Under the pieces are notes generated by a model. It was given only the letters and a program-made list of their open reading frames with translations. It ran no database searches and was not told the origin of the DNA. A DNA stretch of 64,000 bases from IMG/VR virus record IMGVR_UViG_3300025121_000282, positions 186,001 through 250,000 of that record; one strand, written 5' to 3'. Positions 5,249 through 27,260 of this stretch are shown piece after piece; within the stretch, counting starts at the first letter, position 1; every line of letters starts with the position of its first letter. Made by a program: the position numbers and the translations under genes.

Positions 5249-5297
5249 GGCAACCCTGGATTGACCGGGACCGAGACAAGACGAAGAATCCCAGAGA

Positions 5298-5385
5298 GCG
5301 AGAGTGGCGAAAAACAGGAAGACGCCCTAGCTTCAGGTGCTAGGGGCTGCAAGGCACTCAGGTTCGAATCCTGACTCTCGTACCA
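5298..5385 (+). tRNA. trnL: tRNA-Leu (CAG)
   Basis: Acceptor GCGAGAG/CTCTCGT+ACCA, anticodon arm CTAGC-TTCAGGT-GCTAG, long variable arm, T arm TCAGG-TTCGAAT-CCTGA; own motif at 5261. Confidence 0.93.
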
Positions 5386-5626
5386 CGGTCCAACAAAGGA
5401 GCACTGTTTAAAAATGACCAAATATAATCTTCTGTTCTACGATTTAATCGACCCGTGCCCGTAGCATCCCTGCCCGCTTCGACTTTTCTAGGGTACATGT
5501 ACGGTGACACGGGAAGGTTCCAATCCCTTTTTGAGTTGTCTAAACCAGTTTAAAGTATGGGTAACAATAAAATGATTCGAGCACCGCCCCGCTGAGGTTA
5601 TGTTAGTTTTTGATAAAAGAAACCAA

Positions 5627-5707
5627 ATGCCCAGACTGGATGACACCGAAACCAAGGTGCTCCTGTTCTGGGCATTGGCGTATTTAGAATACGAAAACCA
5701 TAATTGA
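5627..5707 (+). CDS. 26-aa micro-ORF (MPRLDDTETKVLLFWALAYLEYENHN)
   Basis: Stop inside TTGAC at 5704; weak RBS. Confidence 0.35.
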   Translation: MPRLDDTETKVLLFWALAYLEYENHN

Positions 5708-5751
5708 CTATAATATGTCTCCATGTGAAGAGTCTCATAAGGAGAAACCAA

Positions 5752-6096
5752 ATGACAGACCCTGTACGGTTCCACATTGATGCCATCCCCAGAGATTTCG
5801 CGCCCACAACCGAAACGGTCATCCTGTTTGACGATGTGGCGGAGCTTCACATTGATGTCAGGGACCCGGGGGAACTGTGGAAGGTCTGGTTCAAGGACGA
5901 CACTGATTACCCATACCCCACAGAGCGGATGAGTTACGACCACAGCAACCAAACCTGGACGTGGTGTTTCTACGATTACAACGTCCAGGTTCCATGTGAG
6001 ACTTTCGGAATTTGCGCACAGACCGCCTGGATGACCTACATGTACCTGAGCATCCAGTACAGGAAGGGACGTGAGGGAGTCAAAGCCAAGGATTGA
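5752..6096 (+). CDS. hypothetical protein
   Basis: AAGGAG RBS; stop inside TTGAC at 6093. Confidence 0.8.
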   Translation: MTDPVRFHIDAIPRDFAPTTETVILFDDVAELHIDVRDPGELWKVWFKDDTDYPYPTERMSYDHSNQTWTWCFYDYNVQVPCETFGICAQTAWMTYMYLSIQYRKGREGVKAKD

Positions 6097-6140
6097 CTGC
6101 AATCCGACTCCATGTGAAGAGCAGTAAGGGAGACGCCAAG

Positions 6141-6455
6141 ATGGTTATCAAACCTGGGACCAAATCCACTACCTTGGGAACGGGTTTGACTTTCAAGGTC
6201 CGAGACCACCGTGGGACATACGGATTTCCCGGCGACCAGTGTGGGTTTGTGTTCAGGTATGACTACCCTGTCCCCGATACTTCCAGGATGGAAGTCTACA
6301 CAATTCAGGCTGATATCGATCGGGATTGGCATGTGAGTTACACTTCCTGGGTTGGACCCAAAGAAGTTATTTGCGGACCCCATAATGAGTCCTACTGGTC
6401 CACAAACGAAGCGGCTGCCCAAGCCCTTGAGTGGTATTTGAAGAGTAGAGGTTGA
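6141..6455 (+). CDS. family C hypothetical (TTLG...FPGDQ...GPKE), paralog of 10975..11286
   Basis: Alignable end to end; stop inside TTGAC at 6452. Confidence 0.85.
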   Translation: MVIKPGTKSTTLGTGLTFKVRDHRGTYGFPGDQCGFVFRYDYPVPDTSRMEVYTIQADIDRDWHVSYTSWVGPKEVICGPHNESYWSTNEAAAQALEWYLKSRG

Positions 6456-6466
6456 CCGCAGTCAAG

Positions 6467-6712
6467 TCATCGAGGTGGTAGAATGCCCTCGTGCTTGATT
6501 CTTTTCTTATTCACTTCTACTATCAAGTCATAATCCGCCCGCAACTTTTCCCGCAGTTCTTCGCTGACTCCCGCAAAACCAAGCCCCGTTTTCTTTATTT
6601 CTGCCATGGTGACGCTGTAGGCATCGTTGGCCTTTTGGCACTGGTCCAACAGGTCTACCATGACGGGGTCGATTTGGGCTATTCGTCTCAGTTGTTTTGC
6701 GAGAGTTATCAT
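6467..6712 (-). CDS. hypothetical helical protein (MITLAKQLRRIA)
   Basis: 81 aa ORF on the opposite strand, inserted between cassettes. Confidence 0.7.
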   Translation of the reverse strand: MITLAKQLRRIAQIDPVMVDLLDQCQKANDAYSVTMAEIKKTGLGFAGVSEELREKLRADYDLIVEVNKKRIKHEGILPPR

Positions 6713-6810
6713 TTTTGGCTCTTACATGTGTAGTATCCTGGTGGAATAAAAACACAATTGACCATAGTATGTTCCGGTATGAAGATCTGTATAGGAGGAA
6801 CCAATTAAAA

Positions 6811-7068
6811 ATGAGCGATTCCGACACCTACTACTACGTTTCCATCGTCTACTACGGTCACAAGGTCTTCAAGTGCCACGGAATGTGCCCCGACGAGGCG
6901 CATAAAGAGGTCTACCTCCCGCTCTTCGAACAGTATGGAAACAGTCTTCCGTGGCACCAGTGTGGGGATGCGCCCACCGAACGGTACAAGGTGGTCATGA
7001 TGCCCTACGTGGCCGACCGCATCACCCAGAACGAAAATGGGGAGTGGGTTGCTTTCACCGGAACCTGA
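6811..7068 (+). CDS. hypothetical protein
   Basis: AGGAGG RBS; motif at 6758. Confidence 0.8.
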   Translation: MSDSDTYYYVSIVYYGHKVFKCHGMCPDEAHKEVYLPLFEQYGNSLPWHQCGDAPTERYKVVMMPYVADRITQNENGEWVAFTGT

Positions 7069-7120
7069 ATTAACTTGCCTGTTCTTCGGGTGAAAGACCA
7101 CAGAAAGGAGTTGTAACCAA

Positions 7121-7273
7121 ATGCTCGAACAAATCATTCACTCATTTCAACACCTTCACATTCACAATGACCACGGGGAACTCACTGCCCTGGTCGGCCT
7201 GAGTGCCACCTTCGGCATTTCAATCCGCCTGTACTGGAGCCGGATTTGTGCTTTCTTCAAGAAGGGGTGCTGA
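7121..7273 (+). CDS. 50-aa small protein
   Basis: AAGGAG RBS after TTAAC motif at 7070; below ORF-track cutoff. Confidence 0.55.
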   Translation: MLEQIIHSFQHLHIHNDHGELTALVGLSATFGISIRLYWSRICAFFKKGC

Positions 7274-7509
7274 TTATAATGAACATCTACAAAAAACCTT
7301 CCTGATGAATGACCCCATTTTCGGCCAAACCATGGGCTTCAGTGCCATCTGGTTCACTTTCAGCCGAGGCCTTGAGTATTACAGCGGCGGCCTTTTCCCG
7401 GGTCCACCAACGTGTGGACCCGGTTCAGTTTCCGCATCCCGTTCGGGCTTCTGACCATCCTCTCGTACATCACGGTTTATTCCACGTACCTCGCCGTTCG
7501 GAGTTGAAA

Positions 7510-7815
7510 ATGGCTGACCGATTCATCAACAATGGTTGTCATGCGTGGTTTAGCTATAAGCAGGCAGAGGTGGCTGGGTATCGGGTCCATCAACGACCGG
7601 ATGGGACGACTTATCAGGTGACTACAATCAGTGACACCACAGACCACGGGTGTGGTTGGGATGACATGAAGTACCTCGGTGTCATCGGTCCGGATGATAC
7701 CTCTCTGGGCCAGTACGAGGCCACGGACCCCCTGCAGGCTATGCTCAATCGAGCCGCTGACGAGGCATGGAACGATGCCGCCCTCAACTACTACGAAGAA
7801 ATGGGGTGGGATTGA
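7510..7815 (+). CDS. family B hypothetical (HAWFS...RPDGTTY...HGCGWDDM), copy 1
   Basis: Paralogs at 13446 and 16245; stop inside TTGAC at 7812. Confidence 0.85.
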   Translation: MADRFINNGCHAWFSYKQAEVAGYRVHQRPDGTTYQVTTISDTTDHGCGWDDMKYLGVIGPDDTSLGQYEATDPLQAMLNRAADEAWNDAALNYYEEMGWD

Positions 7816-7869
7816 CCTATTCGGTGCCTGTGTGAATGGACATGGTTGGCCACAAAGGAGCCCACTAAA

Positions 7870-8190
7870 ATGAAAGCCAAGGTCTCGTGTGAACTGTGTC
7901 CGAACGAGGAGGGTGTTTCCACCATGTACCTCGTTTTTGAGGCACCCTACCATTCTCCCAGCGGGGTTGAAGGAGTCTTTATCAACGAGGAATGCGGGGA
8001 TTGGGTCTCTATCTCCACCCTCGACGACGAGACCTTCACGTTTGCAGACGAAGTGAGTGGAAAAACCGCCACCTTCACCGAAAGAGAGTTGACTGCTCTC
8101 GTCTGCGAGGCCATGAAATCTCAGTATGGCTGGTCTTGGACTGGTCCCGTGATGTTTGTGGCAAAGGTCATGTACAAACACAAAGTCTGA
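7870..8190 (+). CDS. hypothetical protein (CELC)
   Basis: AAGGAG RBS; motif at 7812. Confidence 0.75.
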   Translation: MKAKVSCELCPNEEGVSTMYLVFEAPYHSPSGVEGVFINEECGDWVSISTLDDETFTFADEVSGKTATFTERELTALVCEAMKSQYGWSWTGPVMFVAKVMYKHKV

Positions 8191-8273
8191 CACCTTTTAG
8201 TCCTGACGGTTGACCGATCGTAGCCTCAGGTGAAGAATTATAGACACCAATCGACTGCAACAAGGAAAATTGA

Positions 8274-8615
8274 ATGAAAGCCATCTGGAAAGCCAATCGG
8301 GTCGATTTCCGCCCGTCCAACGTGGACCCCAACAATCTGGGCGCGAGTCACTGGCAGAATGCTGAGACGGAGACTACGGTTTTCTGGATCGTGGCCTTTC
8401 TGGTGGCCACGGGTGACACGTGGCGATCGTTTCCGCGTTCGGAACTGAATGCCTGGGCCTTTGAACATGGGCACCGTCCGGCTGGAATCCATTTCAACAA
8501 ACTCTCGGTGTACGACGACAATGACTCGCGCTCCGAGTATGCCGACCTGATTACCGAGCCGTTGGGGGACAACGACATCCGTATGGTGCCGACGACCCGT
8601 TTTCTTTCTAGGTGA
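8274..8615 (+). CDS. hypothetical protein
   Basis: Motif at 8210; stop is the TGA of the next GTGAA. Confidence 0.75.
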   Translation: MKAIWKANRVDFRPSNVDPNNLGASHWQNAETETTVFWIVAFLVATGDTWRSFPRSELNAWAFEHGHRPAGIHFNKLSVYDDNDSRSEYADLITEPLGDNDIRMVPTTRFLSR

Positions 8616-8669
8616 ACAATCTTACGAGACAATCAACCAATCAATTATTATAAAAGGACACCAATTATA

Positions 8670-9098
8670 ATGAAAATCTGGCTCAGCTATTCCACCCTCT
8701 GTCACTCCCTCGAAGCGGCGATCACCGACCCCAAGGTCGTTCTCCCCGAGCCGGGTGACTGTTTCTTCTTCGGGTGTCACGAGATTGTGGTTGGGTCCTG
8801 CCCCTACGCCGGGCACACAGGCCGCGAGTGGCCGCCTGGGGTCCTGTTTGCGGCACAGAAGCTGTTCATTACGGCCAAAAGCGTGAGACGTGCTCTCTGT
8901 TGTGGCGATCTTCGAGATGAGGGCAAAGATCTATGGGAAGAACTGGCAAAACTTACGGGGGCCCGCGACCGGTTCATGAGTGAGTTGGACCGGATTTTTG
9001 AGGATCGGTGCCGCGGGCAGGATTACTGTTATCCCACTGCGGTGGAAGTCCTGGAAAAGATGGGCATTGTGGGTGTGAGTCACACGACCCGCACTTGA
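8670..9098 (+). CDS. hypothetical protein
   Basis: Stop inside TTGAC at 9095. Confidence 0.75.
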   Translation: MKIWLSYSTLCHSLEAAITDPKVVLPEPGDCFFFGCHEIVVGSCPYAGHTGREWPPGVLFAAQKLFITAKSVRRALCCGDLRDEGKDLWEELAKLTGARDRFMSELDRIFEDRCRGQDYCYPTAVEVLEKMGIVGVSHTTRT

Positions 9099-9140
9099 CT
9101 AGTGCCATTGCCTGCTGAATGTACCCTAGGAGAATCAATC

Positions 9141-9347
9141 ATGAATAAATTTGTGGTCACCACCACACGCATCCCCACCAATTTCAACGCCCCGACGTGC
9201 AATGTTGTGGAAGCGGAAACTGAGCAGGGTGCACTGCTCATCATCAAGGACTACTACCGCGACTTCAGTCTCCCTCAGTACGTGTACTCAGTCTCCCCCT
9301 ATGTTCCGCCCCCTGCTGGACGTATCTTGAACAGAGAAGAACTGTGA
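9141..9347 (+). CDS. hypothetical protein
   Basis: TAGGAG RBS; motif at 9095. Confidence 0.75.
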   Translation: MNKFVVTTTRIPTNFNAPTCNVVEAETEQGALLIIKDYYRDFSLPQYVYSVSPYVPPPAGRILNREEL

Positions 9348-9403
9348 AGGATTGACCAGGGTACTAACAGACTGAAGAACAACAGACATTCAAGGAGCAA
9401 CTT

Positions 9404-9598
9404 TTGAACACTTCAGAACATGAACTTCGTGAACGCGTCTGTGGAATTCTCCAGTCCGGAGACTTGGCGCTCTACCAGATGAAGCGCCAATGGTTCAAGT
9501 CCAAGGCTGACGAAATTGCTATCCAGAGTCTGGAGGACCACCTTGCTTTGGTGCGTGCCTACCTCAAAAAGCGAGACGCCGAACTGAAGGGTGGCTGA
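9404..9598 (+). CDS. coiled-coil hypothetical protein
   Basis: AAGGAG RBS with TTG start; motif at 9352. Confidence 0.7.
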   Translation: MNTSEHELRERVCGILQSGDLALYQMKRQWFKSKADEIAIQSLEDHLALVRAYLKKRDAELKGG

Positions 9599-9599
9599 A

Positions 9600-9701
9600 A
9601 TGTGGGAACTTTTTGAAGTGACTGGATGGGTTGGGGTTTTCAGTCTGACTATGGTGGGCATCGACTGGATCGGTGTCAAACTCGGCCTCTGGGTCGATTG
9701 A
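9600..9701 (+). CDS. 33-aa hydrophobic peptide
   Basis: MWELFEVTGWVGVFSLTMVGIDWIGVKLGLWVD; stop inside TTGAC at 9698. Confidence 0.5.
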   Translation: MWELFEVTGWVGVFSLTMVGIDWIGVKLGLWVD

Positions 9702-9704
9702 CCG

Positions 9705-10019
9705 ATGCCTGACCTATATCTCACCCCGAGAAACATGGAAAGAATCGAGGCGGGCTGCAACATCCACGGTGGCTTTCATTTGAGCCCCGATTGCAGTGGG
9801 CTCTTACGCCATCATACTTGTCCCATTCCCAGACCAGTTGTGGTGTACAACTTGCAACCTGCCACTGCTACGGTGGCATACAAAGCCAAAATTACAATTG
9901 CTGGAATTGAAGTCGGGAACGTATGCTCCCTATGCTTCAATCAAGAAATGTCCAGACAAAATCAAGTAAAGATATCGGAAGCTCTAAAGGAGAACGAAGA
10001 TCATGGAAAATCAGTATGA
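9705..10019 (+). CDS. hypothetical protein (CSLC)
   Basis: 104 aa ORF overlapping the next start. Confidence 0.55.
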   Translation: MPDLYLTPRNMERIEAGCNIHGGFHLSPDCSGLLRHHTCPIPRPVVVYNLQPATATVAYKAKITIAGIEVGNVCSLCFNQEMSRQNQVKISEALKENEDHGKSV

Positions 10020-10296
10020 ACTGTTGACGAGAATTCTGCAGGATGCCGGAATTCCCACTGCCACCACACCTCCGAAGCTTCAGCCGTATGGAGATGCCGC
10101 CAAGTGCCCACGCCTCTGGTGGCCAAATACGGAGACACCCTACGTCCAGGTGTGCATGACCAACTCCACCCCCGGACACGAGCGCTATGAGGTCGTGGAC
10201 GACCGGCACAACGCCTTTGGCTACGAACCCCTGGTCGTGGGCGAGGATGTCACGGCCTCAGATGCCACAGCCCTAGTGAGAAACATCCTGGCTTAG
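10003..10296 (+). CDS. hypothetical protein
   Basis: AAGGAG upstream. Confidence 0.7.
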   Translation: MENQYELLTRILQDAGIPTATTPPKLQPYGDAAKCPRLWWPNTETPYVQVCMTNSTPGHERYEVVDDRHNAFGYEPLVVGEDVTASDATALVRNILA

Positions 10297-10319
10297 GCCA
10301 TTCCCAGTGCTGCAATAAG

Positions 10320-10868
10320 TTAAATGCTACTGTAAGCCCTTAACACTTCTGCAACGTCGTCATACACTTCTGGTTCAGTCGCAACAGTAGCGCAGCAATT
10401 CACCGACCTGACCACTCTGGGCTGGAAGATTTCTACCAGGGTCCTGGTCTGCTCGTTCACAGCGTCCCTCAAAGTCCTAAAAATTCCCACACCACCCTTG
10501 ATTTTGTAATCGGTCTGCTTGTCGTCCAACGCAAGCTTTGCGCCCGCCTTGGTTATAGCCTTGTCTATAATTTTCCAAATTGCAGTCCGAGTCAACTTAC
10601 CCCAATGAAGGATAGACTTGAAAAGTAGGGATTTGGCTTCCAACTTATTCTTGCGTCCGTATTCCAGAAGGCGAGTCTGTAGGCTGGCTTTGACTTTGTC
10701 TGGCATTTGACAATCTCGCACCAGAGCCTGAGCTTGCCCATAAGTCAAACCTGAAATTTGCTTATCTGAGGTAATTCTCAGGTTTGCGCATAGGATGAGC
10801 AGTAACTTATCACGGTTTGAGTGGGCAACTTCTATCATGGTTTTGAAAAGTTTGGCTACAGTGCTCAT
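10320..10868 (-). CDS. basic, AT-rich hypothetical protein (possible late/virion protein)
   Basis: AGGAG RBS; TGTATAAT upstream (10900-10907). Confidence 0.8.
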   Translation of the reverse strand: MSTVAKLFKTMIEVAHSNRDKLLLILCANLRITSDKQISGLTYGQAQALVRDCQMPDKVKASLQTRLLEYGRKNKLEAKSLLFKSILHWGKLTRTAIWKIIDKAITKAGAKLALDDKQTDYKIKGGVGIFRTLRDAVNEQTRTLVEIFQPRVVRSVNCCATVATEPEVYDDVAEVLRAYSSI

Positions 10869-10974
10869 TTTGCAACTCTCCTGTTTACTTCTTGCTACTA
10901 TTATACAATGAAAAGACTATTGACTCGAATTGTTTCCATACGAATAACCACACACACCAACAAGGAGATTAAAA

Positions 10975-11286
10975 ATGGACATCAGCGACACAGACAATAA
11001 CACCACCCTGGGAACGTCGTTGACTTTCCTCATTCTGGACTACCGCGGGAAATACGACTTTCCTGGCGACCAAAACGGGTTTGTGTTCGAACATCGGAGG
11101 TCCATACCCAAGACCACCAGTACCGAGGGCTATGCCATCCGGACAGATGACACTGGTGGGGGGTGGCGGGTGGACTACATCCCCCAATTCGGTCCCAAAG
11201 AGACTGTCTACGGACCCAACCGGGAAAGCTACTGGCCCACCAACGAGGAAGCGGCTGCAGCCCTGGAGTTGTACCTGAAAGATTGA
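10975..11286 (+). CDS. family C hypothetical, copy 2
   Basis: Paralog of 6141..6455; stop inside TTGAC at 11283. Confidence 0.85.
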   Translation: MDISDTDNNTTLGTSLTFLILDYRGKYDFPGDQNGFVFEHRRSIPKTTSTEGYAIRTDDTGGGWRVDYIPQFGPKETVYGPNRESYWPTNEEAAAALELYLKD

Positions 11287-11345
11287 CCGCAGTCTGTTTC
11301 CATGTGAATAGCCCCAGACACCAAGAACCACAAGGAGATTGAAGA

Positions 11346-11642
11346 ATGCGCTTCCTCAATGATAATGACCTCAGTGCTCTCGTCTGCCACATGAATCGTC
11401 AGATTGTGGGCTTGGCCTCAAGGTCGGTCAACGGGGAACGAGTCACGTTGATTGCCAAGCTCCACGTCGCCGTTCCCGATGATGACACGGTGGAGGACAC
11501 CGATGTGCCAGTGACCCCCTCGACAGAGCGAGGCACGATCACTTACCACACCCATCGCCACCTGGGCGGGGTCCTGCTGGAAGAGACGGACGGAACTCCG
11601 AGTCTCACACAGGCAATCCGGGAGTTCAATGAATGGATTTAG
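11346..11642 (+). CDS. hypothetical protein
   Basis: AAGGAG RBS; motif at 11283. Confidence 0.75.
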   Translation: MRFLNDNDLSALVCHMNRQIVGLASRSVNGERVTLIAKLHVAVPDDDTVEDTDVPVTPSTERGTITYHTHRHLGGVLLEETDGTPSLTQAIREFNEWI

Positions 11643-11696
11643 TTATTAACGTAGATCGTTTCCATGTGAAGCACCAACAAAGGAGACTGAAAGCCA

Positions 11697-11963
11697 ATGT
11701 CCAACCTCGAAGACGCCGATTTCACGCGGATCATCGAAGCGAGTCTCGCAGTGGAGAAAGCTGCGGACGAACTTCAGACCAAGCTCGCCTCTCTCCAGAA
11801 CAAGGTGGCACCATACCTACCCCCGAACAAGGGCTTGAGGGTTTGGATTGAAGCCATGAGAGCGGCGGCCTACTGTGACGGTCCTGGCGAGACTGGACAC
11901 GAAGACGGGAAGGTGTTTAGCTCTGCCCGCTTGGCCCGAGTCCTGCTGAGTGCCAGTGAATGA
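11697..11963 (+). CDS. hypothetical protein
   Basis: AAGGAG RBS; TTAAC motif at 11646. Confidence 0.75.
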   Translation: MSNLEDADFTRIIEASLAVEKAADELQTKLASLQNKVAPYLPPNKGLRVWIEAMRAAAYCDGPGETGHEDGKVFSSARLARVLLSASE

Positions 11964-12689: not shown

Positions 12690-12690
12690 G

Positions 12691-20759: not shown

Positions 20760-21065
20760 ATGTCCCGCATCGACGCCGAATTCAAGTCCGTTGTCGCTTT
20801 CGCCAGTTACAAGCTCGACAACGACGACCCCACCTTCACGGGTGCCGATTTGCAAACCCTCAACCGGGTGACGCTGACATCGGTCCCGAACATCAAGCTC
20901 CAATTGCTCGAACTTGGCCTGACCCAGGCCATTCCCGAAAAGGCCTCCGTGGTCCGAGGGTTCACCGCGAACTCGCACGACCGGTGGGCCGGCAACCCCT
21001 GCGCGGGTGGGTCGGGTGGGTCGTCGATCCAGAAGTTCGCAGGGAATGCGGCCGGCTGGAATTGA
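20760..21065 (+). CDS. hypothetical protein
   Basis: AGGAGG RBS; stop inside TTGAC at 21062. Confidence 0.8.
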   Translation: MSRIDAEFKSVVAFASYKLDNDDPTFTGADLQTLNRVTLTSVPNIKLQLLELGLTQAIPEKASVVRGFTANSHDRWAGNPCAGGSGGSSIQKFAGNAAGWN

Positions 21066-21117
21066 CCTGAAGTCCTGTGGGGCGAAAGTCCACACACCAA
21101 ACCAGGGAGTTTTCAGT

Positions 21118-21387
21118 ATGTCGCGAGGCAACTCACAAGTCAATCGAAACTACGAATGCGCCACAAAGATGGCCGAGTGTGCTGATTTCGTGGTTGAGCA
21201 CTTGGGCTCACACGCACACTTTCAGGTGCGATGGGGGCAATTCTGGGCGACGGTCCGCCTCGACAGAAATGGGGATGTCTCGTGCGGGAGTTTCAATCGA
21301 AACTTTTCGCCTTGGGGCTCATCCGCCTCTGTTTTTTCCGAATTGCTGAGACAGTGGAAGTCCGAGGGTGAACCCAAGGCTGATTGA
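21118..21387 (+). CDS. hypothetical protein
   Basis: GGGAG RBS; stop inside TTGAC at 21384. Confidence 0.75.
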   Translation: MSRGNSQVNRNYECATKMAECADFVVEHLGSHAHFQVRWGQFWATVRLDRNGDVSCGSFNRNFSPWGSSASVFSELLRQWKSEGEPKAD

Positions 21388-21447
21388 CCCGTTTCCATTT
21401 CGGACGAAAAGACTACGAGACACCAGCCAACAAAGGAGTAGTTTCCA

Positions 21448-21726
21448 ATGTCCCCACCCTTTCTGATCGATTTTCAGGCCATGCAAGACCACCTGAACTC
21501 AAGGGAGATGGTACTCGCTGCCTGTTCCATCAATCGGGGTCAGCACGCAGGACAGCGGCTACGGCTCGTGGCGCGTTTCCTGGTGGAAGACCCCGGTGAT
21601 AAGGACACGATTTTCTACTATGTCACCCGCACGTTCCAGGGTGATAAGGTGTACGAGGATGGGCCAAGCCCACGTCTGGCTCTCTCGGTGTCGCTGTTCA
21701 ACAGCATCTCCCTGGGCGAAGGTTGA
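21448..21726 (+). CDS. hypothetical protein
   Basis: AAGGAG RBS; stop inside TTGAC at 21723. Confidence 0.8.
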   Translation: MSPPFLIDFQAMQDHLNSREMVLAACSINRGQHAGQRLRLVARFLVEDPGDKDTIFYYVTRTFQGDKVYEDGPSPRLALSVSLFNSISLGEG

Positions 21727-21777
21727 CCCGCCTCGTTTCCATGTGAAGACCAGCACACAATCAAGGAGGAAACAGTA

Positions 21778-22035
21778 ATGACTCTGGCCAACGACCCCCG
21801 CCGGTGGGGCGGGATTTGCAAGTGGGATGGAACTTCGGCTCCCACGGTGACCGTCCAACCCCGGCTCCTGGATCTCCAAGGGTACGACTCGAACGGTCAG
21901 TACTTCGGGCGCGGTCTCCCCCTCTACTGCGTCACAGACGAAGAGGGGGACATGAACTTCTTCGTTCGTGCGGAGGGCATGGACCACGCCCGAGAGTTGG
22001 TTCTGGAGCGGGTTCCCACCTGTCAGTTCGCCTAA
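21778..22035 (+). CDS. hypothetical protein (LDxxGYDxxGxYFGxG)
   Basis: AAGGAGG RBS; motif at 21723. Confidence 0.8.
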   Translation: MTLANDPRRWGGICKWDGTSAPTVTVQPRLLDLQGYDSNGQYFGRGLPLYCVTDEEGDMNFFVRAEGMDHARELVLERVPTCQFA

Positions 22036-22098
22036 GTGGGAATTGACTGAGGTCCGTTTCCACCTGAATTGTGACACACTGAGAAATGGAGACTGAAA

Positions 22099-22323
22099 GT
22101 GGCCAACGTTCCCTACAAGTTTCGTGGTCTTCCCTGCAACATCACGACCGACGACAAGCTCTGGTGCATCGTCGGTCGCTTCGTCAATGAACGGGGTTGC
22201 GGTGGGGGCGCCTTGGAGTGGTGCTACGATGAGCAGGACGCCTCGGCTGTTCTGGCTCAGATGGTTCAGGACAGCCAGTTTCGAAACCTGCAAGCCATCA
22301 CGTATAAGCAGTTCTGCGCTTAA
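22099..22323 (+). CDS. hypothetical protein
   Basis: GGAG RBS; stop inside TTAAC at 22320. Confidence 0.75.
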   Translation: MANVPYKFRGLPCNITTDDKLWCIVGRFVNERGCGGGALEWCYDEQDASAVLAQMVQDSQFRNLQAITYKQFCA

Positions 22324-22373
22324 CCCACGCCGTTTCCATGTGAACAGTCACGCACTGGAAAAGGAGACCGAAA

Positions 22374-22514
22374 ATGGTAAAGAATCTCATCATCGGTCTC
22401 CTGCTCGTTGCCTTCGTGGCACGGGCAAACCCAGAAAAGGTGGCTCATCTGAGCAAGATGGCCACGACTGGAGTCACCTACCTGGAGAAACAGGTCGGGT
22501 TCAAATTCTGGTGA
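22374..22514 (+). CDS. 46-aa membrane-anchored/secreted peptide
   Basis: AAGGAG RBS; MVKNLIIGLLLVAFVARA hydrophobic N-terminus. Confidence 0.65.
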   Translation: MVKNLIIGLLLVAFVARANPEKVAHLSKMATTGVTYLEKQVGFKFW

Positions 22515-22562
22515 ATTGACCGCACCACAATTCGGACGAAGAGTGTTGTAGGAGACACCCCC

Positions 22563-22868
22563 ATGTACAAGAGTTTGGCAGAGTTTCTAGCCTCAACGAA
22601 TTTGCTGGAGAGGTTGACCAACATCGACAGGGCCCTGAATGTAAACGGGGCCCTGTGCAACCACCATGACGGTGTGGTCTTCAAAATCAACTTCGGCCCC
22701 TATACGGCGAGTTGCATGTGGCTGGATACCGTGTCGGACAACACCTGGAATGTCCAACTCTCCTACCTGGATTCAGACCACAAATACCACCCGTTCGGTG
22801 GCAGCGTTTCAACCTCTGAGTTCAAGATCGTAAAGGGTGTAGCCGAGATCTGCGGACTCGGCAATTGA
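22563..22868 (+). CDS. hypothetical protein
   Basis: AGGAG RBS; stop inside TTGAC at 22865. Confidence 0.8.
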   Translation: MYKSLAEFLASTNLLERLTNIDRALNVNGALCNHHDGVVFKINFGPYTASCMWLDTVSDNTWNVQLSYLDSDHKYHPFGGSVSTSEFKIVKGVAEICGLGN

Positions 22869-23245
22869 CGGGGTCTTCTCCGGGTGAAGAGTCCCCGAGG
22901 CGCTTTTGCCTCCCTTGTCCTCTGGGGGTTTTAACCATGCCTTCTTCCGATCTCTCCTTTTCCTTTTCCGGCCGTCCCTACCGCGCCCGCCTTCTCTCCG
23001 AGCCCGGCAAGGGTGACGCGCTGGTCTTCGGTCTCAGCCTCAACCCGAAACTGGACAAGGTCTGGGTTCTGGTGCAACGTGACGGCGCGTGGGTGCGCCC
23101 CACGGGTGAAAAGCCCTCGGCTCTGGGGCGGGCCGCAGTCGCAGCGATCGGTTGATCGGCGTTTCCGATTGACGGGGTCTTCTCCGGGTGAAGAGTCCCC
23201 GAGGCGCTTTTGCCTCCCTTGTCCTCTGGGGGTTTTAACCATGCC
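22864..23245 (+). repeat. 78-bp exact direct repeat (22864-22941, 23168-23245) comprising promoter, leader and ATG
   Basis: Read directly base for base. Confidence 0.95.
22937..23155 (+). CDS. hypothetical protein (MPSSDLSF)
   Basis: ATG inside repeat copy 1. Confidence 0.7.
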   Translation: MPSSDLSFSFSGRPYRARLLSEPGKGDALVFGLSLNPKLDKVWVLVQRDGAWVRPTGEKPSALGRAAVAAIG

Positions 23246-23540
23246 CGCCGCTGCCGCCCTTGCCCTCGACACGTTCCAGGCCAACCACGCGAATGACGAC
23301 CTTTGGGACGTCATGACGTTTGCTGATATGGTGGAAAACTGGCACCTTTCGACCCCCGAAGAAGAGTGCTTCAAAGCGGCTCTGGAGTTGGAGGGGCTCG
23401 GCCTCCTCACCGTCAGTACCGGATTTCTGTGCTACTCGGTCGAACTGACGGGCCTTGGGCGAGAGGCCTCCCAGATCTTCCACCAGCGGTTTTTGGACCG
23501 CGTGAAGGCCCAGAACCCGGACTTCGATGGCGTATGGTAA
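23241..23540 (+). CDS. hypothetical protein (MPAAAALA)
   Basis: ATG inside repeat copy 2. Confidence 0.75.
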   Translation: MPAAAALALDTFQANHANDDLWDVMTFADMVENWHLSTPEEECFKAALELEGLGLLTVSTGFLCYSVELTGLGREASQIFHQRFLDRVKAQNPDFDGVW

Positions 23541-23592
23541 GGGATTGACTGAAATCTGTTTCCATGTGAATTGTGACAAGGAGGAACTCAAA

Positions 23593-23820
23593 ATGGAAAC
23601 AGAAATCCTGACCCAGTGGTTCAACGAGGAAAGCGGCAATCACTGGATCGTGGTGGAAGACGCCATTGGGAAGTTTCTTCACAAGGGAAAACGGGTGGCA
23701 CTGCTGGCGGTCAGCGGTGATGTGGACAACACCTTCGTACTGAAGTGGGTTGTCGACCCCTGCTGGACGACGGAAGAGGAAGAATCGGCACTGTCAGTGC
23801 TTGGAGTTGCAGCCCGCTGA
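23593..23820 (+). CDS. hypothetical protein
   Basis: GAGGA RBS; motif at 23545. Confidence 0.75.
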   Translation: METEILTQWFNEESGNHWIVVEDAIGKFLHKGKRVALLAVSGDVDNTFVLKWVVDPCWTTEEEESALSVLGVAAR

Positions 23821-23865
23821 ATCGATTCAGCGGGATTGACCGCAGTTTTTTCGTGTGAATTACAA

Positions 23866-24050
23866 TGTACCGGGGCGACCTCCGAAGGGCCACTTAGCTC
23901 TTAAACATGTGCCTACGCCCCAAAGTGCTATGCGGTAGGGTGCATGCAATAGTCGTCAATGGTGTCTGGCGTAAGTGTGCTGCGGGGTCGGGTCAATGTT
24001 CGACCGTAAGACCGTCTGAAGCACACAGACACCGTTCCTTTTAAAGCTGG
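23866..24050 (+). ncRNA. candidate structured ncRNA 4
   Basis: Motif at 23836 followed by no ORF; nested stems 23961-67/24027-33, 23975-81/24020-26, 23986-90/24001-05 and 23906-16/23935-46. Confidence 0.55.
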
Positions 24051-24051
24051 A

Positions 24052-24090
24052 CCCCCCCCCTGCAATAATGGCTGCGGGCGGGGATAGATG
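24052..24090. repeat. C9 tract plus hairpin element copy 3
   Basis: GCAATAATGGCTGCGGGCGGGATAGATGT at 24062-24090. Confidence 0.85.
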
Positions 24091-24318
24091 TGTCAAACGT
24101 GTGGACACCTGCTACGCCTGTCAACGCGTCCACGCTGCATCCGCACAACCCACTCAGACGTACCCCCACGGGAGACATTCGAGCCGCACAATCCATTGTA
24201 ACCCGTTTCCACATAATAGTAAGTTGTGGTGGGTGGCAGGTTGTCCGAGGCATTTGAAAACTCACTGTTGAATCTTCCACCTGAGATTGACCCGTTTCCA
24301 TCTCGGGTGAAAAACAAC

Positions 24319-24714
24319 ATGGAAACAACATGGACCAATGAAGACGCAGCCGAAGCAGGACGAGCCTACCAAGGAGCCAACGACCCGGATTGGCAGGCAC
24401 CTGACCTGGACTGGCGGTACGAACCTGCTTTTCCAGTTGAAAAACTCATCCCGCTGATGCCGAGTGGGTTCAACGGCTGGAATTCGTGGCTGCTGGACGA
24501 GCGGCAGTGGGACGAGTCTGGAGGTACCAGTCGATGGGGCGACGAATTCACCGAGTGGTGGAAGCAACAGTCCGAGGATGAGCCCGTGGTCCTCGTGGAA
24601 TCGCACGATGGGTCCAAAATCCTTGGGATCTGGGATGGGTGGCCCCGGTCTGCGGTTTCCATCACCTCAAGGTTGCCGACCCTACCTGCCTTTGTGGGTC
24701 GGGCCAGACAATGA
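24319..24714 (+). CDS. possible degenerate ParB/Srx-like domain protein; probably leaderless
   Basis: EPVVLVE...IWDGWPR resembles the ParB DGxHR motif with H replaced by P; ATG 8 nt after GTGAA. Confidence 0.6.
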   Translation: METTWTNEDAAEAGRAYQGANDPDWQAPDLDWRYEPAFPVEKLIPLMPSGFNGWNSWLLDERQWDESGGTSRWGDEFTEWWKQQSEDEPVVLVESHDGSKILGIWDGWPRSAVSITSRLPTLPAFVGRARQ

Positions 24715-24806
24715 TTCAGCCATAACTCCCTGGTGACAAGTTGCAATTGACCGAACTTTCGTTCAGGCGAAAGTTCTGGAGAGACAACCAACCACGAAGA
24801 TTCCAA

Positions 24807-25025
24807 ATGACCCTCCCCATCACGATTTTCGTTGTCACGACCGCCTCGTCCATTGACGAAAACACACCGAACCCGAAGGTGATGGTGGGACACCTCTCCG
24901 AAGGCGAAATCTGGAACCAGTTCACCGAGCTCCTGGGTGGGTCTGACTGCGAACTCATCCAGGAGAGCGAAACCCGCTGGACCGGCGTCGTGGGAGACCG
25001 GACGGTCTTCGCCTTCCACGCCTGA
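24807..25025 (+). CDS. hypothetical protein
   Basis: Motif at 24747. Confidence 0.7.
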   Translation: MTLPITIFVVTTASSIDENTPNPKVMVGHLSEGEIWNQFTELLGGSDCELIQESETRWTGVVGDRTVFAFHA

Positions 25026-25085
25026 ACGATTGACGGGCTTTGTTTCTGTCTGACGAACACCACACCAACAAGGGAGACTTCGAAA

Positions 25086-25304
25086 ATGACTCGCGAAACC
25101 GTCACCAAGTGCATTGCCTTCATTTACATCTGCCTTTGCACCATTGGCCTCGGCGCCATGGCGGGCCTGCAGGAGCGGCAGTTCAGCGGGGCATGGTGGG
25201 TGCTCAGTCTCCTGATGGCCGCGGTCGTGGCGGTCATGGGCCTCATGGCCACCGTCTGCGAGCGCAAGCACCTGGGTTGGCGAATCTGGGTCGAAGAGTG
25301 CTGA
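25086..25304 (+). CDS. two-TM membrane protein
   Basis: GGGAG RBS; two hydrophobic segments. Confidence 0.75.
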   Translation: MTRETVTKCIAFIYICLCTIGLGAMAGLQERQFSGAWWVLSLLMAAVVAVMGLMATVCERKHLGWRIWVEEC

Positions 25305-25364
25305 TTGACGGAGCCTCCTGAGGGGCGAAGAGTCCCAGACCAACAACCAAGAGGAGACCGCACG

Positions 25365-25709
25365 ATGCCATTCCCCACCCCCCAGATCGAAGCTGCCACT
25401 CCCACCCCCTGCTCCGCCTTTCGGGCGTGGGCTGTCTACGCCGACTTCGACGGCAATGCGCCTGACACCAAGGACCTCGTCCTTTGCGCCTCCGAACCGC
25501 TGGCGCAAGCGGCGGCAGAGTTCCTCGCGTGGGCTGCCGACGAGCAGCAGGCGAACTGTTACAATGGCGCTGACTGCGACCCTGATGCCGATGGTGTTGC
25601 CGTCCCATCGGTCGACGAAGCGAATCGCGCGAGGAATTTCGTGGTCCGCGAGACCGTGGCCTCTCGGGTCTGCACGACCTGGGACGAGGTGTTGGCCGAC
25701 CTTCGCTAA
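25365..25709 (+). CDS. hypothetical protein
   Basis: GAGGAG RBS; motif at 25305. Confidence 0.75.
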   Translation: MPFPTPQIEAATPTPCSAFRAWAVYADFDGNAPDTKDLVLCASEPLAQAAAEFLAWAADEQQANCYNGADCDPDADGVAVPSVDEANRARNFVVRETVASRVCTTWDEVLADLR

Positions 25710-25716
25710 CCTGACC

Positions 25717-25741
25717 TTCGTCCTCGACTGAGAGTCGTCAA
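25717..25741 (-). promoter_or_regulatory. antisense promoter motif TTGAC-N15-ACGAA pointing into 25365..25709
   Basis: Exact motif on the - strand just after the stop codon. Confidence 0.65.
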
Positions 25742-25999
25742 GCTGTGCCCAGTCTGCCGAGAGGTGGCCTGGGCACAGCCGTACCTGAGTTCTGAGAGAT
25801 TCGTCCTCACAGGCATCCGGCTCTTCGGGCTGATTGGCCGATTGACGGAGGGTCGCAGCGGGTGAAAAAGGATAAGAGGACGAGATAGTTTCGTTTCGGT
25901 CCTCCTGCCCCGGTCCCCCGACTAAGGATTGACGGACCCGGGGCCGAGACGAAGAATCCCAGAGACAGCGAATCAACCCAAGACGAAGGAGATCATCCC

Positions 26000-26506
26000 A
26001 TGGCCACCAAGTCCACCAAGAGCACCACCAAGTCCCCCCGCGCCACCCGCAAGCAGGCCGAGGTCCTCGACGCCCTCGGTTTCCCGGTCCCCGCCATCAT
26101 GGAGGCCGCTCCCGAGCCCGTCGTGGCGCCCGAGCCCGAAATCCCGGTGGTCGTGGCCGTCAAGGCCGAAAAGGCGGTCCGAGTCGTCCCCGAGGCCCCG
26201 CTCTGCCTCTGCGGCTGCCTCGTGCAGACGAGCAGCCACCTGCGGACCTTCCGCCAGGGCCATGACGCCCGGCTGGTGGGCTTCCTGGCCGCCAACGAGC
26301 GGGCGGTCGCGAAGCAGAAGGAGGCCCCTCACAACCTCTCGGAGGCGCAGATCACCGCCGCCTGCCAGATCCGGAACCGCAAGGCGGAGGCCGCCGCCGC
26401 GAAGCTCCCTTCGACCTCGTCGAAGCCCGTGCTGGAGGCCGCTCCTGCGGAGCAGAACGAAGCCGAGCAGAGCACGGACGAGCAGGACGCCGCGAACGCC
26501 GGCTGA
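26000..26506 (+). CDS. family A (CLCGC...GHDAR) protein, copy 3
   Basis: Paralogy; motif at 25929; AAGGAG RBS. Confidence 0.88.
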   Translation: MATKSTKSTTKSPRATRKQAEVLDALGFPVPAIMEAAPEPVVAPEPEIPVVVAVKAEKAVRVVPEAPLCLCGCLVQTSSHLRTFRQGHDARLVGFLAANERAVAKQKEAPHNLSEAQITAACQIRNRKAEAAAAKLPSTSSKPVLEAAPAEQNEAEQSTDEQDAANAG

Positions 26507-26513
26507 TCGGGCC

Positions 26514-26538
26514 TTCGTCTGACCGACCCGCCCGTCAA
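26514..26538 (-). promoter_or_regulatory. antisense promoter motif TTGAC-N15-ACGAA pointing into 26000..26506
   Basis: Exact motif on the - strand just after the stop codon. Confidence 0.65.
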
Positions 26539-26629
26539 GCTTTCCGAGCCGATTGACCGCAGCCTCTGAGGGGCGAAGGAATCCCGAGGGCAGTTTCGCC
26601 CCCCCCCCACCAACAGAGGACCATTTACA

Positions 26630-26962
26630 ATGATCAGCGCTTTTCGGGACATGGTTGCTGAATTCGAACGGACCAAGGCTGCTTTCGAAGCCGCACAACG
26701 GAAGTTGGAGCAGGGACGGCGGCAGTGTGCCCATCTGTGGGGACCCACCCAATACGATCCCATCAGGACCAAGGGATACGAAAAGCAGGACCTCATGGGT
26801 CATTTCACGGTGAGCCAGGACGGTCACGTCAACGCTCCCACGGTGTACATCCCTCCGACCGAAACCCCGCAGTGGGTCCGCACCTGCGAACACTGTGGAC
26901 TGACCGAAACCACCCGGCAGACAACAGAGCAGAAGAGCTACACGCCGAAGTTCGGGCAGTAG
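26630..26962 (+). CDS. hypothetical protein (coiled coil plus CxH...CxxC Zn site)
   Basis: GAGG RBS; motif at 26553. Confidence 0.75.
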   Translation: MISAFRDMVAEFERTKAAFEAAQRKLEQGRRQCAHLWGPTQYDPIRTKGYEKQDLMGHFTVSQDGHVNAPTVYIPPTETPQWVRTCEHCGLTETTRQTTEQKSYTPKFGQ

Positions 26963-26999
26963 GGGGATTGACCGAATCGCACGATGGGTGAAAGAACAT

Positions 27000-27260
27000 A
27001 TGAGCACACCACAAGAAATCCAGGCCCAGAAAACCCTCATTCAGCGGCTCGATGCGGCCGGAATCCTGGACAGTGAGAAGGACTGCGACTTCAAGCTTCG
27101 GGACGAGTTGTTCTTCCGGGTGGGCAACACGATCTTCGGGTATGAGGACCCCACAATCACGGAGGTTCCCTCAACCACGATGGGTGACGATGTCAGCACC
27201 TACGAGGTGAACTACGTCAGAATGCTCGCCGTGTGGGTTGACCCGGTCAAGATCCTGTAG
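27000..27260 (+). CDS. hypothetical protein, probably leaderless
   Basis: ATG 8 nt after GTGAA of the motif at 26968, no SD. Confidence 0.7.
   Translation: MSTPQEIQAQKTLIQRLDAAGILDSEKDCDFKLRDELFFRVGNTIFGYEDPTITEVPSTTMGDDVSTYEVNYVRMLAVWVDPVKIL

What the first reader, a model, noticed from the sequence alone, without database searches (positions are those of the whole stretch)
5261..27002. Internal evidence places the start site about 8 nt after YGAA and implies a non-sigma70 -10 element
Two SD-less ATGs lie exactly 8 nt after the last A of GTGAA (24319, 27000), and ncRNA 3 stem P1 begins at the same offset (19379). This offset would give the tRNA-Leu a 5-nt leader. YGAA then sits at about -11 to -8. 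The invariant A(-11) and T(-7) pattern of TAnnnT is absent while a sigma70-like TTGAC -35 is kept. Inference: recognition by a phage-encoded or ECF-like sigma, or by a modified host RNA polymerase.
Basis: partly seen in the sequence, partly recalled or inferred. Interest (0 to 1): 0.6.

Follow-up and report, generated by a model that had tools for sequence, protein, structure and literature searches.

The report
Odd early promoters of a jumbo phage
About ninety one-directional promoters in the early arm of an uncultured 315-kb groundwater phage pair a normal-looking -35 box (TTGAC) with an unusual -10 box (YGAA), and RNA seems to start 8 bases later, so some factor other than the usual housekeeping sigma may read them; no RNA data exist to prove it.

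Summary
TTGAC-N17(±1)-GAA occurs 59 times on the + strand in window 2249-30393, and about 90 times in genome 125-216 kb. It is co-oriented with the genes and stops where GC falls from 56% to 47%. The consensus is GATT(G/A)AC(C)-N13-RGG(T/C)GAA-GAAY-nn-Y-A.

Five lines of evidence place the start at the A that lies 8 nt after GAA:
- Y+7/R+8 is kept in 88% of sites and is anchored to GAA, not to the -35.
- Shine-Dalgarno cores pile up at +8 to +10 and never start earlier.
- Four SD-less ATGs opening ORFs of 86-147 codons sit exactly at +8. One has an 80%-identical orthologue with the same N-terminus.
- Closing stems of three structured RNAs begin at +6 to +8.
- A roughly 70%-identical relative keeps TTRAC, GAA and the Y-R step while spacers and leaders diverge.

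With that start, the -10 is not TAnnnT. It matches the ECF sigma-E -10 (GGTCAAA, 5/6-nt discriminator) in sequence and position.

There is a caveat. Measured from the -35, a 17-bp spacer puts AAdaaY where TATAAT belongs, as in sigma-I CGWA, which predicts a start near +11.

The phage encodes no recognisable RNA polymerase or sigma region 2, so host core enzyme must be used. The sigma remains unidentified, and both the host and the real 5' ends are unknown.

The parts
2249..30393 (+). Array of 59 co-oriented promoter-like sites, TT(G/A)AC-N16-18-GAA. Density peaks at about one per 350 bp in window 18-29 kb. The array continues upstream of the window to about genome 125 kb.
5261..5293 (+). Promoter of tRNA-Leu: TTGAC-N15-ACGAA, then GAATCCC-A. 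The inferred start is 5293.
   Evidence: conserved in relative L112 with a 1-nt insertion that keeps the 5-nt AGAGA leader
5298..5385 (+). tRNA-Leu (anticodon CAG)
3410..3442 (+). Promoter in front of a structured non-coding RNA
3441..3554 (+). Structured RNA. A 14-bp closing stem begins at GAA+7. Folding z-score is -5.8.
19239..19272 (+). Promoter (GCGAA, gap 18)
19270..19340 (+). Long hairpin RNA. The stem begins at GAA+6. Folding z-score is -5.4.
19347..19379 (+).
19379..19474 (+). Structured RNA. A 10-bp P1 stem begins at GAA+8 and is followed by a U-rich tail. Folding z-score is -2.7.
24287..24319 (+). Promoter whose +8 A is the A of an SD-less ATG
24319..24714 (+). ORF of 131 codons, probably leaderless. 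An 80%-identical orthologue (P0009, 131 aa) starts with the same METTWTNEDAA.
26968..27000 (+). Promoter whose +8 A is the A of an SD-less ATG
27000..27260 (+). ORF of 86 codons with no other in-frame start in the first 27 codons. No family match.
22865..22920 (+). Promoter plus a 5' hairpin that begins at +9. It is duplicated exactly at 23169-23224.
23169..23224 (+). Second copy of the 22865 promoter and 5' hairpin
23545..23578 (+). Example of the subclass with the spacer ...GTTTCCAT-GTGAA (17 sites in the genome). Here AAGGAGG starts exactly at +8.

Best explanation
The first 30 kb of the window, together with about 60 kb upstream of it in the genome, is the early or host-takeover arm of a 315-kb groundwater jumbo phage. 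Nearly every small gene, several structured RNAs and a tRNA there has its own copy of one bipartite promoter.

The promoter has three parts. The -35 box, GATT(G/A)AC(C), is bound by a sigma region-4-type domain. Seventeen (±1) nt later comes an invariant GAA inside RGG(T/C)GAA-GAA-Y. A conserved pyrimidine-A step follows 7-8 nt after that.

Transcription most likely starts at that A. This produces minimal leaders that begin with the ribosome-binding site, four leaderless mRNAs, and RNAs whose closing stems begin at the 5' end.

With that start, YGAA lies at -11 to -8. This is where ECF sigma-E reads (G)GTCAAA, followed by a 5/6-nt discriminator. It is not where a housekeeping sigma reads TAnnnT.

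The phage has no recognisable RNA polymerase or sigma region 2. I therefore infer that host core polymerase is used with a sigma of ECF-, group-3- or sigma-I-like -10 specificity. That sigma could be a host alternative sigma or an unrecognisably divergent or injected phage factor.

What is shown: the motif, its numbers, its orientation, its conservation in a relative, and the anchoring of the Y-R step to GAA. What is inferred: the start site. What is unknown: the identity of the sigma.
For: Enrichment and strand bias.

Logo. In the gap-17 set, -3 is Y in 52/57 sites, +7 is Y in 50/57 and +8 is R in 50/57. The Y-R step follows GAA in gap-16 and gap-18 sites too.

The -35 tolerates only one variant, G to A, giving TTAAC in 7-9 good sites.

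Shine-Dalgarno cores begin at +8 to +10 in 14 sites and never earlier. ATG at +8 opens ORFs of 145, 147, 131 and 86 codons without an SD, and no other offset from +1 to +21 does this more than once. The start of the 131-codon ORF is confirmed by an 80%-identical orthologue of the same length and N-terminus.

RNA closing stems start at +6, +7 and +8, with folding z-scores of -5.4, -5.8 and -2.7.

Relative L112 is about 68-73% identical in DNA. It keeps TTRAC-N17-YGAA at six sites and Y7R8 at five of them. Spacers, leader lengths and flanks differ, and an inserted gene has its own copy with AAGGAGG at +9.

In near-identical strains there are 0 variants in core positions against 2.5 expected.

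Sigma-E geometry is GGAACTT-16(15-19)-TCAAA-5/6-(+1), with -35 to +1 spanning 25-28 nt and an extended -10 of (T/C)GGTCAAAA (PMC1312014). Here the geometry is TTRACnn-14-YGAAd-6-A, total 25, with consensus RGGTGAAGA.

No phage polymerase or sigma region 2 was found. Canonical TTGACA/TATAAT sites are no more frequent than in shuffles anywhere in the genome, so this is the only abundant promoter class available to an unmodified host enzyme.
Against: There is no 5'-end data. No RNA run holds this DNA.

Geometry counted from the -35 argues for another register. TTGACN plus 17 bp places AAdaaY where TATAAT sits. That keeps A(-11) in 100% of sites and T(-7) in 42%, and the tool's own sigma-70 scan flags seven motif sites this way. 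Sigma-I reads CGWA as C-14 G-13 W-12 A-11. Both predict a start at +10 to +12, where purines are also common (77-82%).

Aligned to sigma-E, the -35-to-(-10) spacer is 14 nt, 2 nt shorter than its optimum and 1 nt below its range. TTGAC is also not the ECF GGAAC.

The lower limit of SD positions is partly a consequence of the conserved Y at +7, so it is not fully independent evidence.

One HNH gene needs a GTG at +6. That does not fit a start at +8 unless it is translated from read-through RNA.

An early promoter class that depends on a host alternative sigma would be unusual.
Confidence: 0.5

Rival explanations
1. These are ordinary early promoters read by the host's housekeeping (group-1) sigma. 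The -35 is TTGACN, the spacer is 17 bp, and the -10 hexamer is AAdaaY, whose second A is the flipped A(-11). The preceding YG is read as duplex DNA, as in sigma-I C-14 G-13 or an extended -10. The start lies at GAA+10 to +12. On this reading the phage consensus is idiosyncratic, as T4 early promoters are.
For: The distance from the C of TTGAC to the last A is exactly that from TTGACA to A(-11). Seven motif sites pass a sigma-70 scan as AAGAAT, AAAAAT or AATCAT. Purines make up 77-82% of positions +10 to +12. A structural precedent exists for CGAA at -14 to -11 (PMC10575876). No phage sigma is available. This is the only abundant promoter class in the genome.
Against: A replaces T at -12 in 100% of sites, and T(-7) is present in only 42%. 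That position varies between strains and in the relative. The YG lies at -14/-13, not at the -15/-14 of the extended -10. A start at +11 would cut the Shine-Dalgarno core in at least 7 sites. It would leave four SD-less ATGs upstream of their own transcript. It would remove 3-5 complementary base pairs from three RNA closing stems. It also leaves the anchored Y+7/R+8 step unexplained.
Confidence: 0.27
2. The motif is mainly an operator. It would be a near-inverted repeat, TTGAC(C)...(G)GTGAA, with half-sites TTSAC 20 bp apart. The binding protein would be a dimeric or tandem-HTH phage protein, for example the 225-aa double sigma-4-like protein, which regulates the early arm rather than defining transcription starts.
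For: The reverse complement of GGTGAA is TTCACC, which compares with TTGACC. The phage encodes a protein with two sigma-4-like HTH units.
Against: The two halves are conserved very differently. The left half accepts only TTRAC. The right half keeps only YGAA, with any base before it. Forward to reverse bias is about 12:1. The sites sit at a fixed short distance upstream of SD plus ATG, tRNA and RNA stems, and the Y-R step is conserved. An operator role could exist in addition to the promoter role, not in place of it.
Confidence: 0.07
3. The unusual -10 is an adaptation to modified phage DNA, carrying 2-aminoadenine and/or Mom-type adenine modification. Such DNA would alter melting and the fit of A(-11) in the sigma pocket.
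For: The genome has an intein-split PurZ homologue whose best solved relatives are phage PurZ structures. It has two Mom-family genes beside it. IMPDH and a GMP-synthase-like gene lie in the early arm.
Against: No MazG-type partner was found. The base composition of the DNA is untested. The invariant AA in the motif would itself be modified. A PurZ-bearing Bacillus phage, vB_BpsS-140, has four perfect TTGACA-18-TGnTATAAT promoters in its early region.
Confidence: 0.06

Closest known systems
ECF sigma-E (RpoE) promoters of E. coli (Rhodius et al. 2005, PMC1312014)
   Same: Both are bipartite. The extended -10, (T/C)GGTCAAAA, compares with RGGTGAAGA here, with 6 of 9 consensus positions identical. 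Both have a 5/6-nt discriminator before a purine start. The -35-to-start distance is 25 nt here, within the sigma-E range of 25-28.
   Different: The base flipped in sigma-E (C) is G here. The -35 is TT(G/A)AC, not GGAACTT. The spacer is 14 nt against 16 (range 15-19). About 90 copies drive the early genes of a phage that encodes no ECF sigma.
Sigma-I promoters of Bacilli and Clostridia (CGWA -10; PMC10575876)
   Same: The four-base -10 core has the form YGAA/CGAA. If the motif is counted from the -35, YG-AA falls at -14 to -11, exactly as in the solved sigma-I open complex.
   Different: T is preferred over C at the first position (35 against 17). The -35 is not an A-tract element read by the special sigma-I C-terminal domain. 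The inferred start is 3 nt closer to the motif.
Sigma-70 / sigma-A housekeeping promoters, including phage early promoters (T4, SPO1)
   Same: The -35 is TTGAC. The 17-bp distance to the place of the -10 hexamer is kept. Identical promoters occur at high density in front of small early genes with strong ribosome-binding sites.
   Different: There is no T at -12 and only a weak T at -7. YG is invariant directly upstream. The inferred start is only 3-4 nt after the hexamer position. Variation in the -35 is limited to G/A at one position.
Sigma-H (Spo0H) promoters of Bacillus. The consensus RNAGGAWWW-N11-12-RNNGAATWW is recalled from memory and was not checked here.
   Same: GAA(T) forms the core of the -10, with about 17-18 nt between the -35 core and GAA.
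   Different: The -35 sequence differs. I could not verify the start-site distance here.

Membership tests
Group-1 (sigma-70/sigma-A) promoter | -35 hexamer close to TTGACA | tested here: met
   TTGAC was required by the search. The flanking G-A is kept in 37/57 and 48/57 sites, and the only variant seen is TTAAC.
Group-1 (sigma-70/sigma-A) promoter | TAnnnT hexamer 17±1 bp downstream (T-12, A-11, T-7) | tested here: not met
   The hexamer at that place is AAdaaY. A-11 is present in 100% of sites, T-12 in 0% and T-7 in 42%.
Group-1 (sigma-70/sigma-A) promoter | Start 6-9 nt after the -10 hexamer | tested here: inconclusive
   Indirect evidence places the start 4 nt after that hexamer. No 5' ends have been mapped.
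Extended -10 promoter | TG at -15/-14, one base before the hexamer | tested here: not met
   YG directly abuts the AA, with no register that keeps A at -11.
ECF sigma-E type promoter | -10 GTCAAA-like element with a 5/6-nt discriminator before a purine start | tested here: inconclusive
   The sequence and the distance fit if the start is at +8. The flipped C is G here, and the start is only inferred.
ECF sigma-E type promoter | -35 GGAAC(TT) with a conserved AAC, and a 16±1 nt spacer | tested here: not met
   The -35 is TTGAC, with TTAAC in a minority. The equivalent spacer is 14 nt.
Sigma-I type promoter | -10 CGWA | tested here: met
   YGAA is present at every site because GAA was required by the search. 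The base before GAA is C in 17/57 sites and T in 35/57 (PMC10575876).
Sigma-I type promoter | A-tract -35 element read by the SigI C-terminal domain | tested here: not met
   The -35 is TTRAC, and there is no A-tract in the logo.
Phage-encoded transcription apparatus (T7/N4-like or phiKZ-like RNA polymerase, phage sigma) | A gene for an RNA polymerase, or for a sigma with region 2, in the phage genome | tested here: not met
   PF00940, PF00623, PF00562, PF04542, TIGR02937 and phrog_351 found nothing except a sigma-4-like domain. 29 of the 33 ORFs of 450 aa or more were scanned, and none is a polymerase. Very divergent proteins could have been missed.

The most novel reading that the evidence does not exclude
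A jumbo phage with no polymerase or sigma of its own drives its whole early programme of about 90 promoters through a hybrid promoter: a sigma-70-like -35 joined to an ECF-like -10 with a short geometry. Two readings would fit. In one, the phage hijacks a host alternative (for example envelope-stress) sigma that infection itself switches on. In the other, a new kind of co-injected specificity factor does the reading, possibly linked to 2-aminoadenine or Mom-modified DNA.
Probability: 0.12. Interest if true: 0.85.

Novelty: new variant of a known kind. Interest (0 to 1): 0.55.

Why it matters
Early promoters show which form of the host polymerase a phage captures first. A class of about 90 near-identical promoters with a non-TATAAT -10, in a phage that has no polymerase or sigma of its own, would have two consequences. 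It would reveal an unknown sigma specificity in an uncultured groundwater host, or a new phage takeover factor. It would also give a compact, well-defined promoter (about 33 bp, minimal leader) to test against panels of sigma factors. The array further marks the 5' ends of several new phage RNAs and of leaderless genes.

Tried and rejected
- Rfam, gathering thresholds, whole window: no family, so the RNAs have no known relatives.
- Megablast and a DNA-polymerase tblastn against 50,697 phage records: no near relative.
- IMG/VR relatives with 40-46% portal identity (three records of about 257 kb): no enrichment of the motif, so it is not a trait of the wider clade.
- Pattern scan of viral contigs: one unrelated contig.
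- Pattern scan of metagenome contigs: only strains of this phage at least 98.8% identical, plus chance hits. The variant test had low power.
- RNA evidence: 14 holding runs, all DNA and kept as contigs. Read laying was therefore not used, because contigs cannot show 5' ends.
- The contig of the 80% orthologue P0009 could not be read, so its promoter could not be compared. No relative of that protein exists in IMG/VR.
- Sigma-32 reading of the TTTCCATGTGAA subclass: rejected, because the spacing to TTGAC is about 4-6 nt too short. The sigma-32 consensus was taken from memory.
- Link to a Z-genome: weakened by the perfect sigma-A promoters in the PurZ-bearing Bacillus phage.
- Structure of the sigma-4-like protein: the model has pLDDT 70. 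Only sigma region-4 domains match, each over about 60 residues, and there is no region-2 fold.
- Intrinsic terminators are not enriched: 12 found against 21 expected.
- The long minus-strand ORFs at 24366-27040 have no family match and lie opposite a + strand gene that has a PHROG hit. I treated them as shadow ORFs.
- The literature search for TTGAC plus GTGAA found no described sigma with this pair.

Full report
CONTEXT. The window is bases 186001-250000 of a 314,886-bp IMG/VR virus record rated complete. The same DNA is found in several groundwater metagenomes. It is a jumbo tailed phage. Recognised genes include terminase, portal, PolA-type DNA polymerase, NAD ligase, DnaB-like helicase, RIIA-like protein, GroEL and baseplate proteins. 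It has no near relative among 50,697 deposited phage genomes. The first 28-29 kb of the window have 52-59% GC and the remainder 42-47%. Across the genome, GC and motif density rise together from about 125 kb to 215 kb and then drop abruptly.

If only TTGAC and GAA are required, the spacing histogram has a single spike. In 150-216 kb, a gap of 17 nt gives 53 forward against 7 reverse, a gap of 18 gives 15, a gap of 16 gives 4, and other gaps stay at background. The minor peaks at gaps 20 and 21 come from the second GAA of GAAGAA.

Taking gaps 16-18, there are 77 sites in 140-235 kb, a few more from 127 kb, and 7-9 good sites with TTAAC in place of TTGAC. In the window, 59 sites lie between 2249 and 30393 on the + strand and only 2 lie in the other 33 kb.

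The logo reads G-A-T-T-G-A-C-(C/G), 13 weakly T/C-rich positions, R-G-G-(T35/C17)-G-A-A, (G/T)-A-A-(T24/C17), two free positions, Y (50/57), and R (50/57, A in 38). When the motif is anchored on YGAA plus the Y-R step, the only tolerated -35 variant is G to A.

WHERE DOES RNA START? There are no RNA runs, so only indirect evidence is available. It points to GAA+8.

(a) The Y+7/R+8 step is the strongest signal outside the two boxes. It stays at +7/+8 from GAA in sites whose -35 is one base nearer or farther. This is the behaviour expected of a pyrimidine(-1)/purine(+1) start selected from the -10 element.

(b) Ribosome-binding cores begin at +8 in 4 sites, +9 in 3, +10 in 7, then thin out, and none begins earlier. 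In several sites AAGGAGG begins exactly at +8. This is partly forced by the Y at +7, so it is not fully independent of (a).

(c) ATG begins at +8 in five sites of the main set and one more at G000 127672. Four of these open ORFs of 145, 147, 131 and 86 codons with no Shine-Dalgarno sequence. No other offset between +1 and +21 opens more than one long ORF. The 145- and 147-codon proteins are unrelated, so they are independent cases. The 131-codon protein has an 80%-identical orthologue that is also 131 aa long and shares its first 11 residues exactly.

(d) Three structured RNAs have long closing stems whose complementarity begins at +6 (19270), +7 (3441) and +8 (19379). Their folding z-scores are -5.4, -5.8 and -2.7. 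Short 5' hairpins start at +9 in 20686 and in the duplicated 22865/23169 sites.

(e) A relative recovered through a paralogous early protein (L112/L113) is about 68-73% identical in DNA and syntenic with window -4000 to 6456. It carries six sites of the same build, five with Y7R8, while spacers, leaders and flanks have diverged. At the orthologue of 5704 the leader is 7 nt longer but C7-A8 is kept. A gene absent from our phage has its own copy, with AAGGAGG at +9. At the tRNA promoter a 1-nt insertion moves C-A to +8/+9 and preserves the 5-nt AGAGA leader.

In strains at least 98.8% identical, no variant falls in the core positions against 2.5 expected. That is a weak test. Two variants fall at +4.

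One gene does not fit. An HNH endonuclease has GTG at +6 as its only possible start. It overlaps the end of the upstream ORF and may be translated by coupling.

WHAT DOES THAT MAKE THE -10? With the start at +8, TTGAC lies at -32 to -28 and YGAA at -11 to -8. No register then gives a TAnnnT hexamer.

The best match I could document is the E. coli sigma-E promoter. Its parameters are -35 GGAACTT, a 16-nt spacer (15-19), an extended -10 of (T/C)GGTCAAAA, a 5/6-nt discriminator, and 25-28 nt from the -35 to the start (PMC1312014). Here the values are TTRACnn, 14 nt, RGGTGAAGA, 6 nt, and 25 nt. Six of nine consensus positions of the -10 agree and the discriminator fits. The spacer is 2 nt short and the -35 differs.

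THE COUNTER-ARGUMENT. Measured from the -35, a 17-bp spacer puts AAdaaY where TATAAT sits. The last A of YGAA is then exactly 20 nt from the C of TTGAC, as A(-11) is in sigma-70 promoters. The tool's sigma-70 scan accordingly lists seven motif sites as TTGACN-17-AAGAAT, AAAAAT or AATCAT.

The solved sigma-I open complex reads CGAA as duplex C-14 G-13, bubble-opening A-12 and pocketed A-11 (PMC10575876). That reproduces this register with a YGAA core. This reading predicts a start at +10 to +12, where purines are also frequent.

It keeps A(-11) but not T(-12), which is absent in every site, and only 42% T(-7). It also conflicts with points (b) to (d) above. I give it about one chance in four.

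WHO READS IT? Six family searches of the whole genome in six frames were run: sigma region 2, region 4, the general sigma-70/ECF model, a phage sigma PHROG, T7-type polymerase, and beta/beta' domains. They found only one protein. It is 225 aa long, lies at G000 about 18849-19526, and sits next to a NusG-like gene and a clamp-loader gene. It has six homologues, two tandem sigma-4-like helix-turn-helix units and no region-2 fold.

29 of the 33 ORFs of 450 aa or more were scanned, and none is a polymerase. Canonical TTGACA/TATAAT sites are no more frequent than in shuffled sequence anywhere in the genome.

The injected DNA must therefore be read by host core polymerase, and the YGAA class is the only abundant candidate for that. 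Three possibilities cannot be told apart with these tools: a host alternative sigma, a housekeeping sigma with unusual habits in an unknown phylum, or a divergent or injected phage factor. The host is unknown. The phage GroEL is only about 40% identical to any bacterial one.

OTHER READINGS. The motif is close to an inverted repeat (TTGACC...GGTGAA), so a dimeric or tandem-HTH regulator could bind it. However, the two halves are conserved very differently. The strand bias, the fixed distance to SD, ATG, tRNA and RNA stems, and the Y-R step make a pure operator unlikely.

The genome also carries an intein-split PurZ homologue whose best solved relatives are the phiVC8 and S-2L PurZ structures. 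It has two Mom-family genes, and IMPDH plus a GMP-synthase-like gene. The DNA may therefore contain 2-aminoadenine or modified adenine. I considered whether this forces an unusual -10. A PurZ-bearing Bacillus phage has four perfect TTGACA-18-TGnTATAAT promoters in its early region, no MazG partner was found here, and the motif itself keeps two invariant A's. I rate this link as unlikely.

VERDICT. 'Non-sigma-70 -10 element' is probable but unproven. 'ECF-like' is a fair description of the -10 half only. 'Phage-encoded sigma' has no candidate. This is a new variant of the familiar bipartite sigma-70-family promoter, not a new kind of system. It would be of real interest to phage-transcription specialists once 5' ends or an in vitro assay exist.

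Noticed in passing
G000 286256-288679 (-), outside the window (L015:6256-8676): An 806-aa adenylosuccinate-synthetase homologue is interrupted by a LAGLIDADG intein. Its best solved relatives are phage PurZ structures (6FM1/6FKO, 7ODX), and 199 PurZ-bearing phages match it at about 32-37% identity. The phage DNA may therefore contain 2-aminoadenine.
   Followed up: partly
G000 284678-286213 (-) and 288682-290385 (-): Two Mom-family (adenine-modifying) proteins flank the PurZ gene. Both are fused to HNH or homing-endonuclease-like parts.
   Followed up: no
G000 180222-181745 (-) and about 181753-182859 (-), just upstream of the window: A GMP-synthase-like gene (GATase plus GMP_synt_C) and an IMPDH gene lie on the opposite strand inside the early arm. 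They would supply guanine nucleotides, and dGMP is the substrate of PurZ.
   Followed up: no
G000 about 18849-19526 (+) (L009:1345-2019) and 18328-18831 (+): A 225-aa protein has two tandem sigma-4-like HTH units and no region 2. It has only six homologues in 5.8 billion proteins and sits next to a NusG-like protein. It may be a late-transcription or shut-off factor.
   Followed up: partly
window 28000-30400: GC drops sharply from about 56-58% to about 47% exactly where the promoter array ends. The high-GC, promoter-dense block (window 18-29 kb) has about one promoter per 350 bp and several non-coding RNAs.
   Followed up: partly
window 22865-22945 and 23169-23250: An exact duplication covers a promoter plus the first ~50 nt of its transcript, including a 5' hairpin. 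In the strain contig L111, segments G000 209184-212560 and 204425-209240 are joined in the other order, which suggests recombination between such repeats.
   Followed up: partly
window 26968-26992, 27534-27559, 28604-28628: Three promoters share the spacer CGAATCGCA(C/T)GAT. A further 17 sites share ...GTTTCCAT before GTGAA. At 24287 that word is also present downstream as an inverted copy (ATGGAAAC). These may be sub-classes with their own regulator.
   Followed up: partly
window 27565-28128 (+): An HNH endonuclease gene has GTG as its only possible start. The GTG lies 6 nt after a TTGAA variant of the motif and overlaps the end of the upstream ORF.
   Followed up: partly
G000 24999-28199 (+), 45576-48407 (+), 37316-40189 (+): The terminase large subunit (1066 aa), a DnaB-like helicase (943 aa) and a methyltransferase-like protein (957 aa) are oversized and carry intein or homing-endonuclease matches. 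The genome appears rich in inteins.
   Followed up: no
window 45160-46785 (+): A phage-encoded GroEL is only about 37-41% identical to the nearest bacterial GroELs found.
   Followed up: partly
window 24366-27040 (-): Two long minus-strand ORFs (536 and 355 aa) have no family match and lie opposite + strand genes. They are probably shadow ORFs of the GC-rich region.
   Followed up: partly
L104 (Bacillus phage vB_BpsS-140) 1952, 31689, 32039, 32755; sigma genes at 33658-34446 and 48214-48891: This PurZ-bearing phage has four perfect extended sigma-A promoters and encodes two sigma-70-family factors.
   Followed up: no
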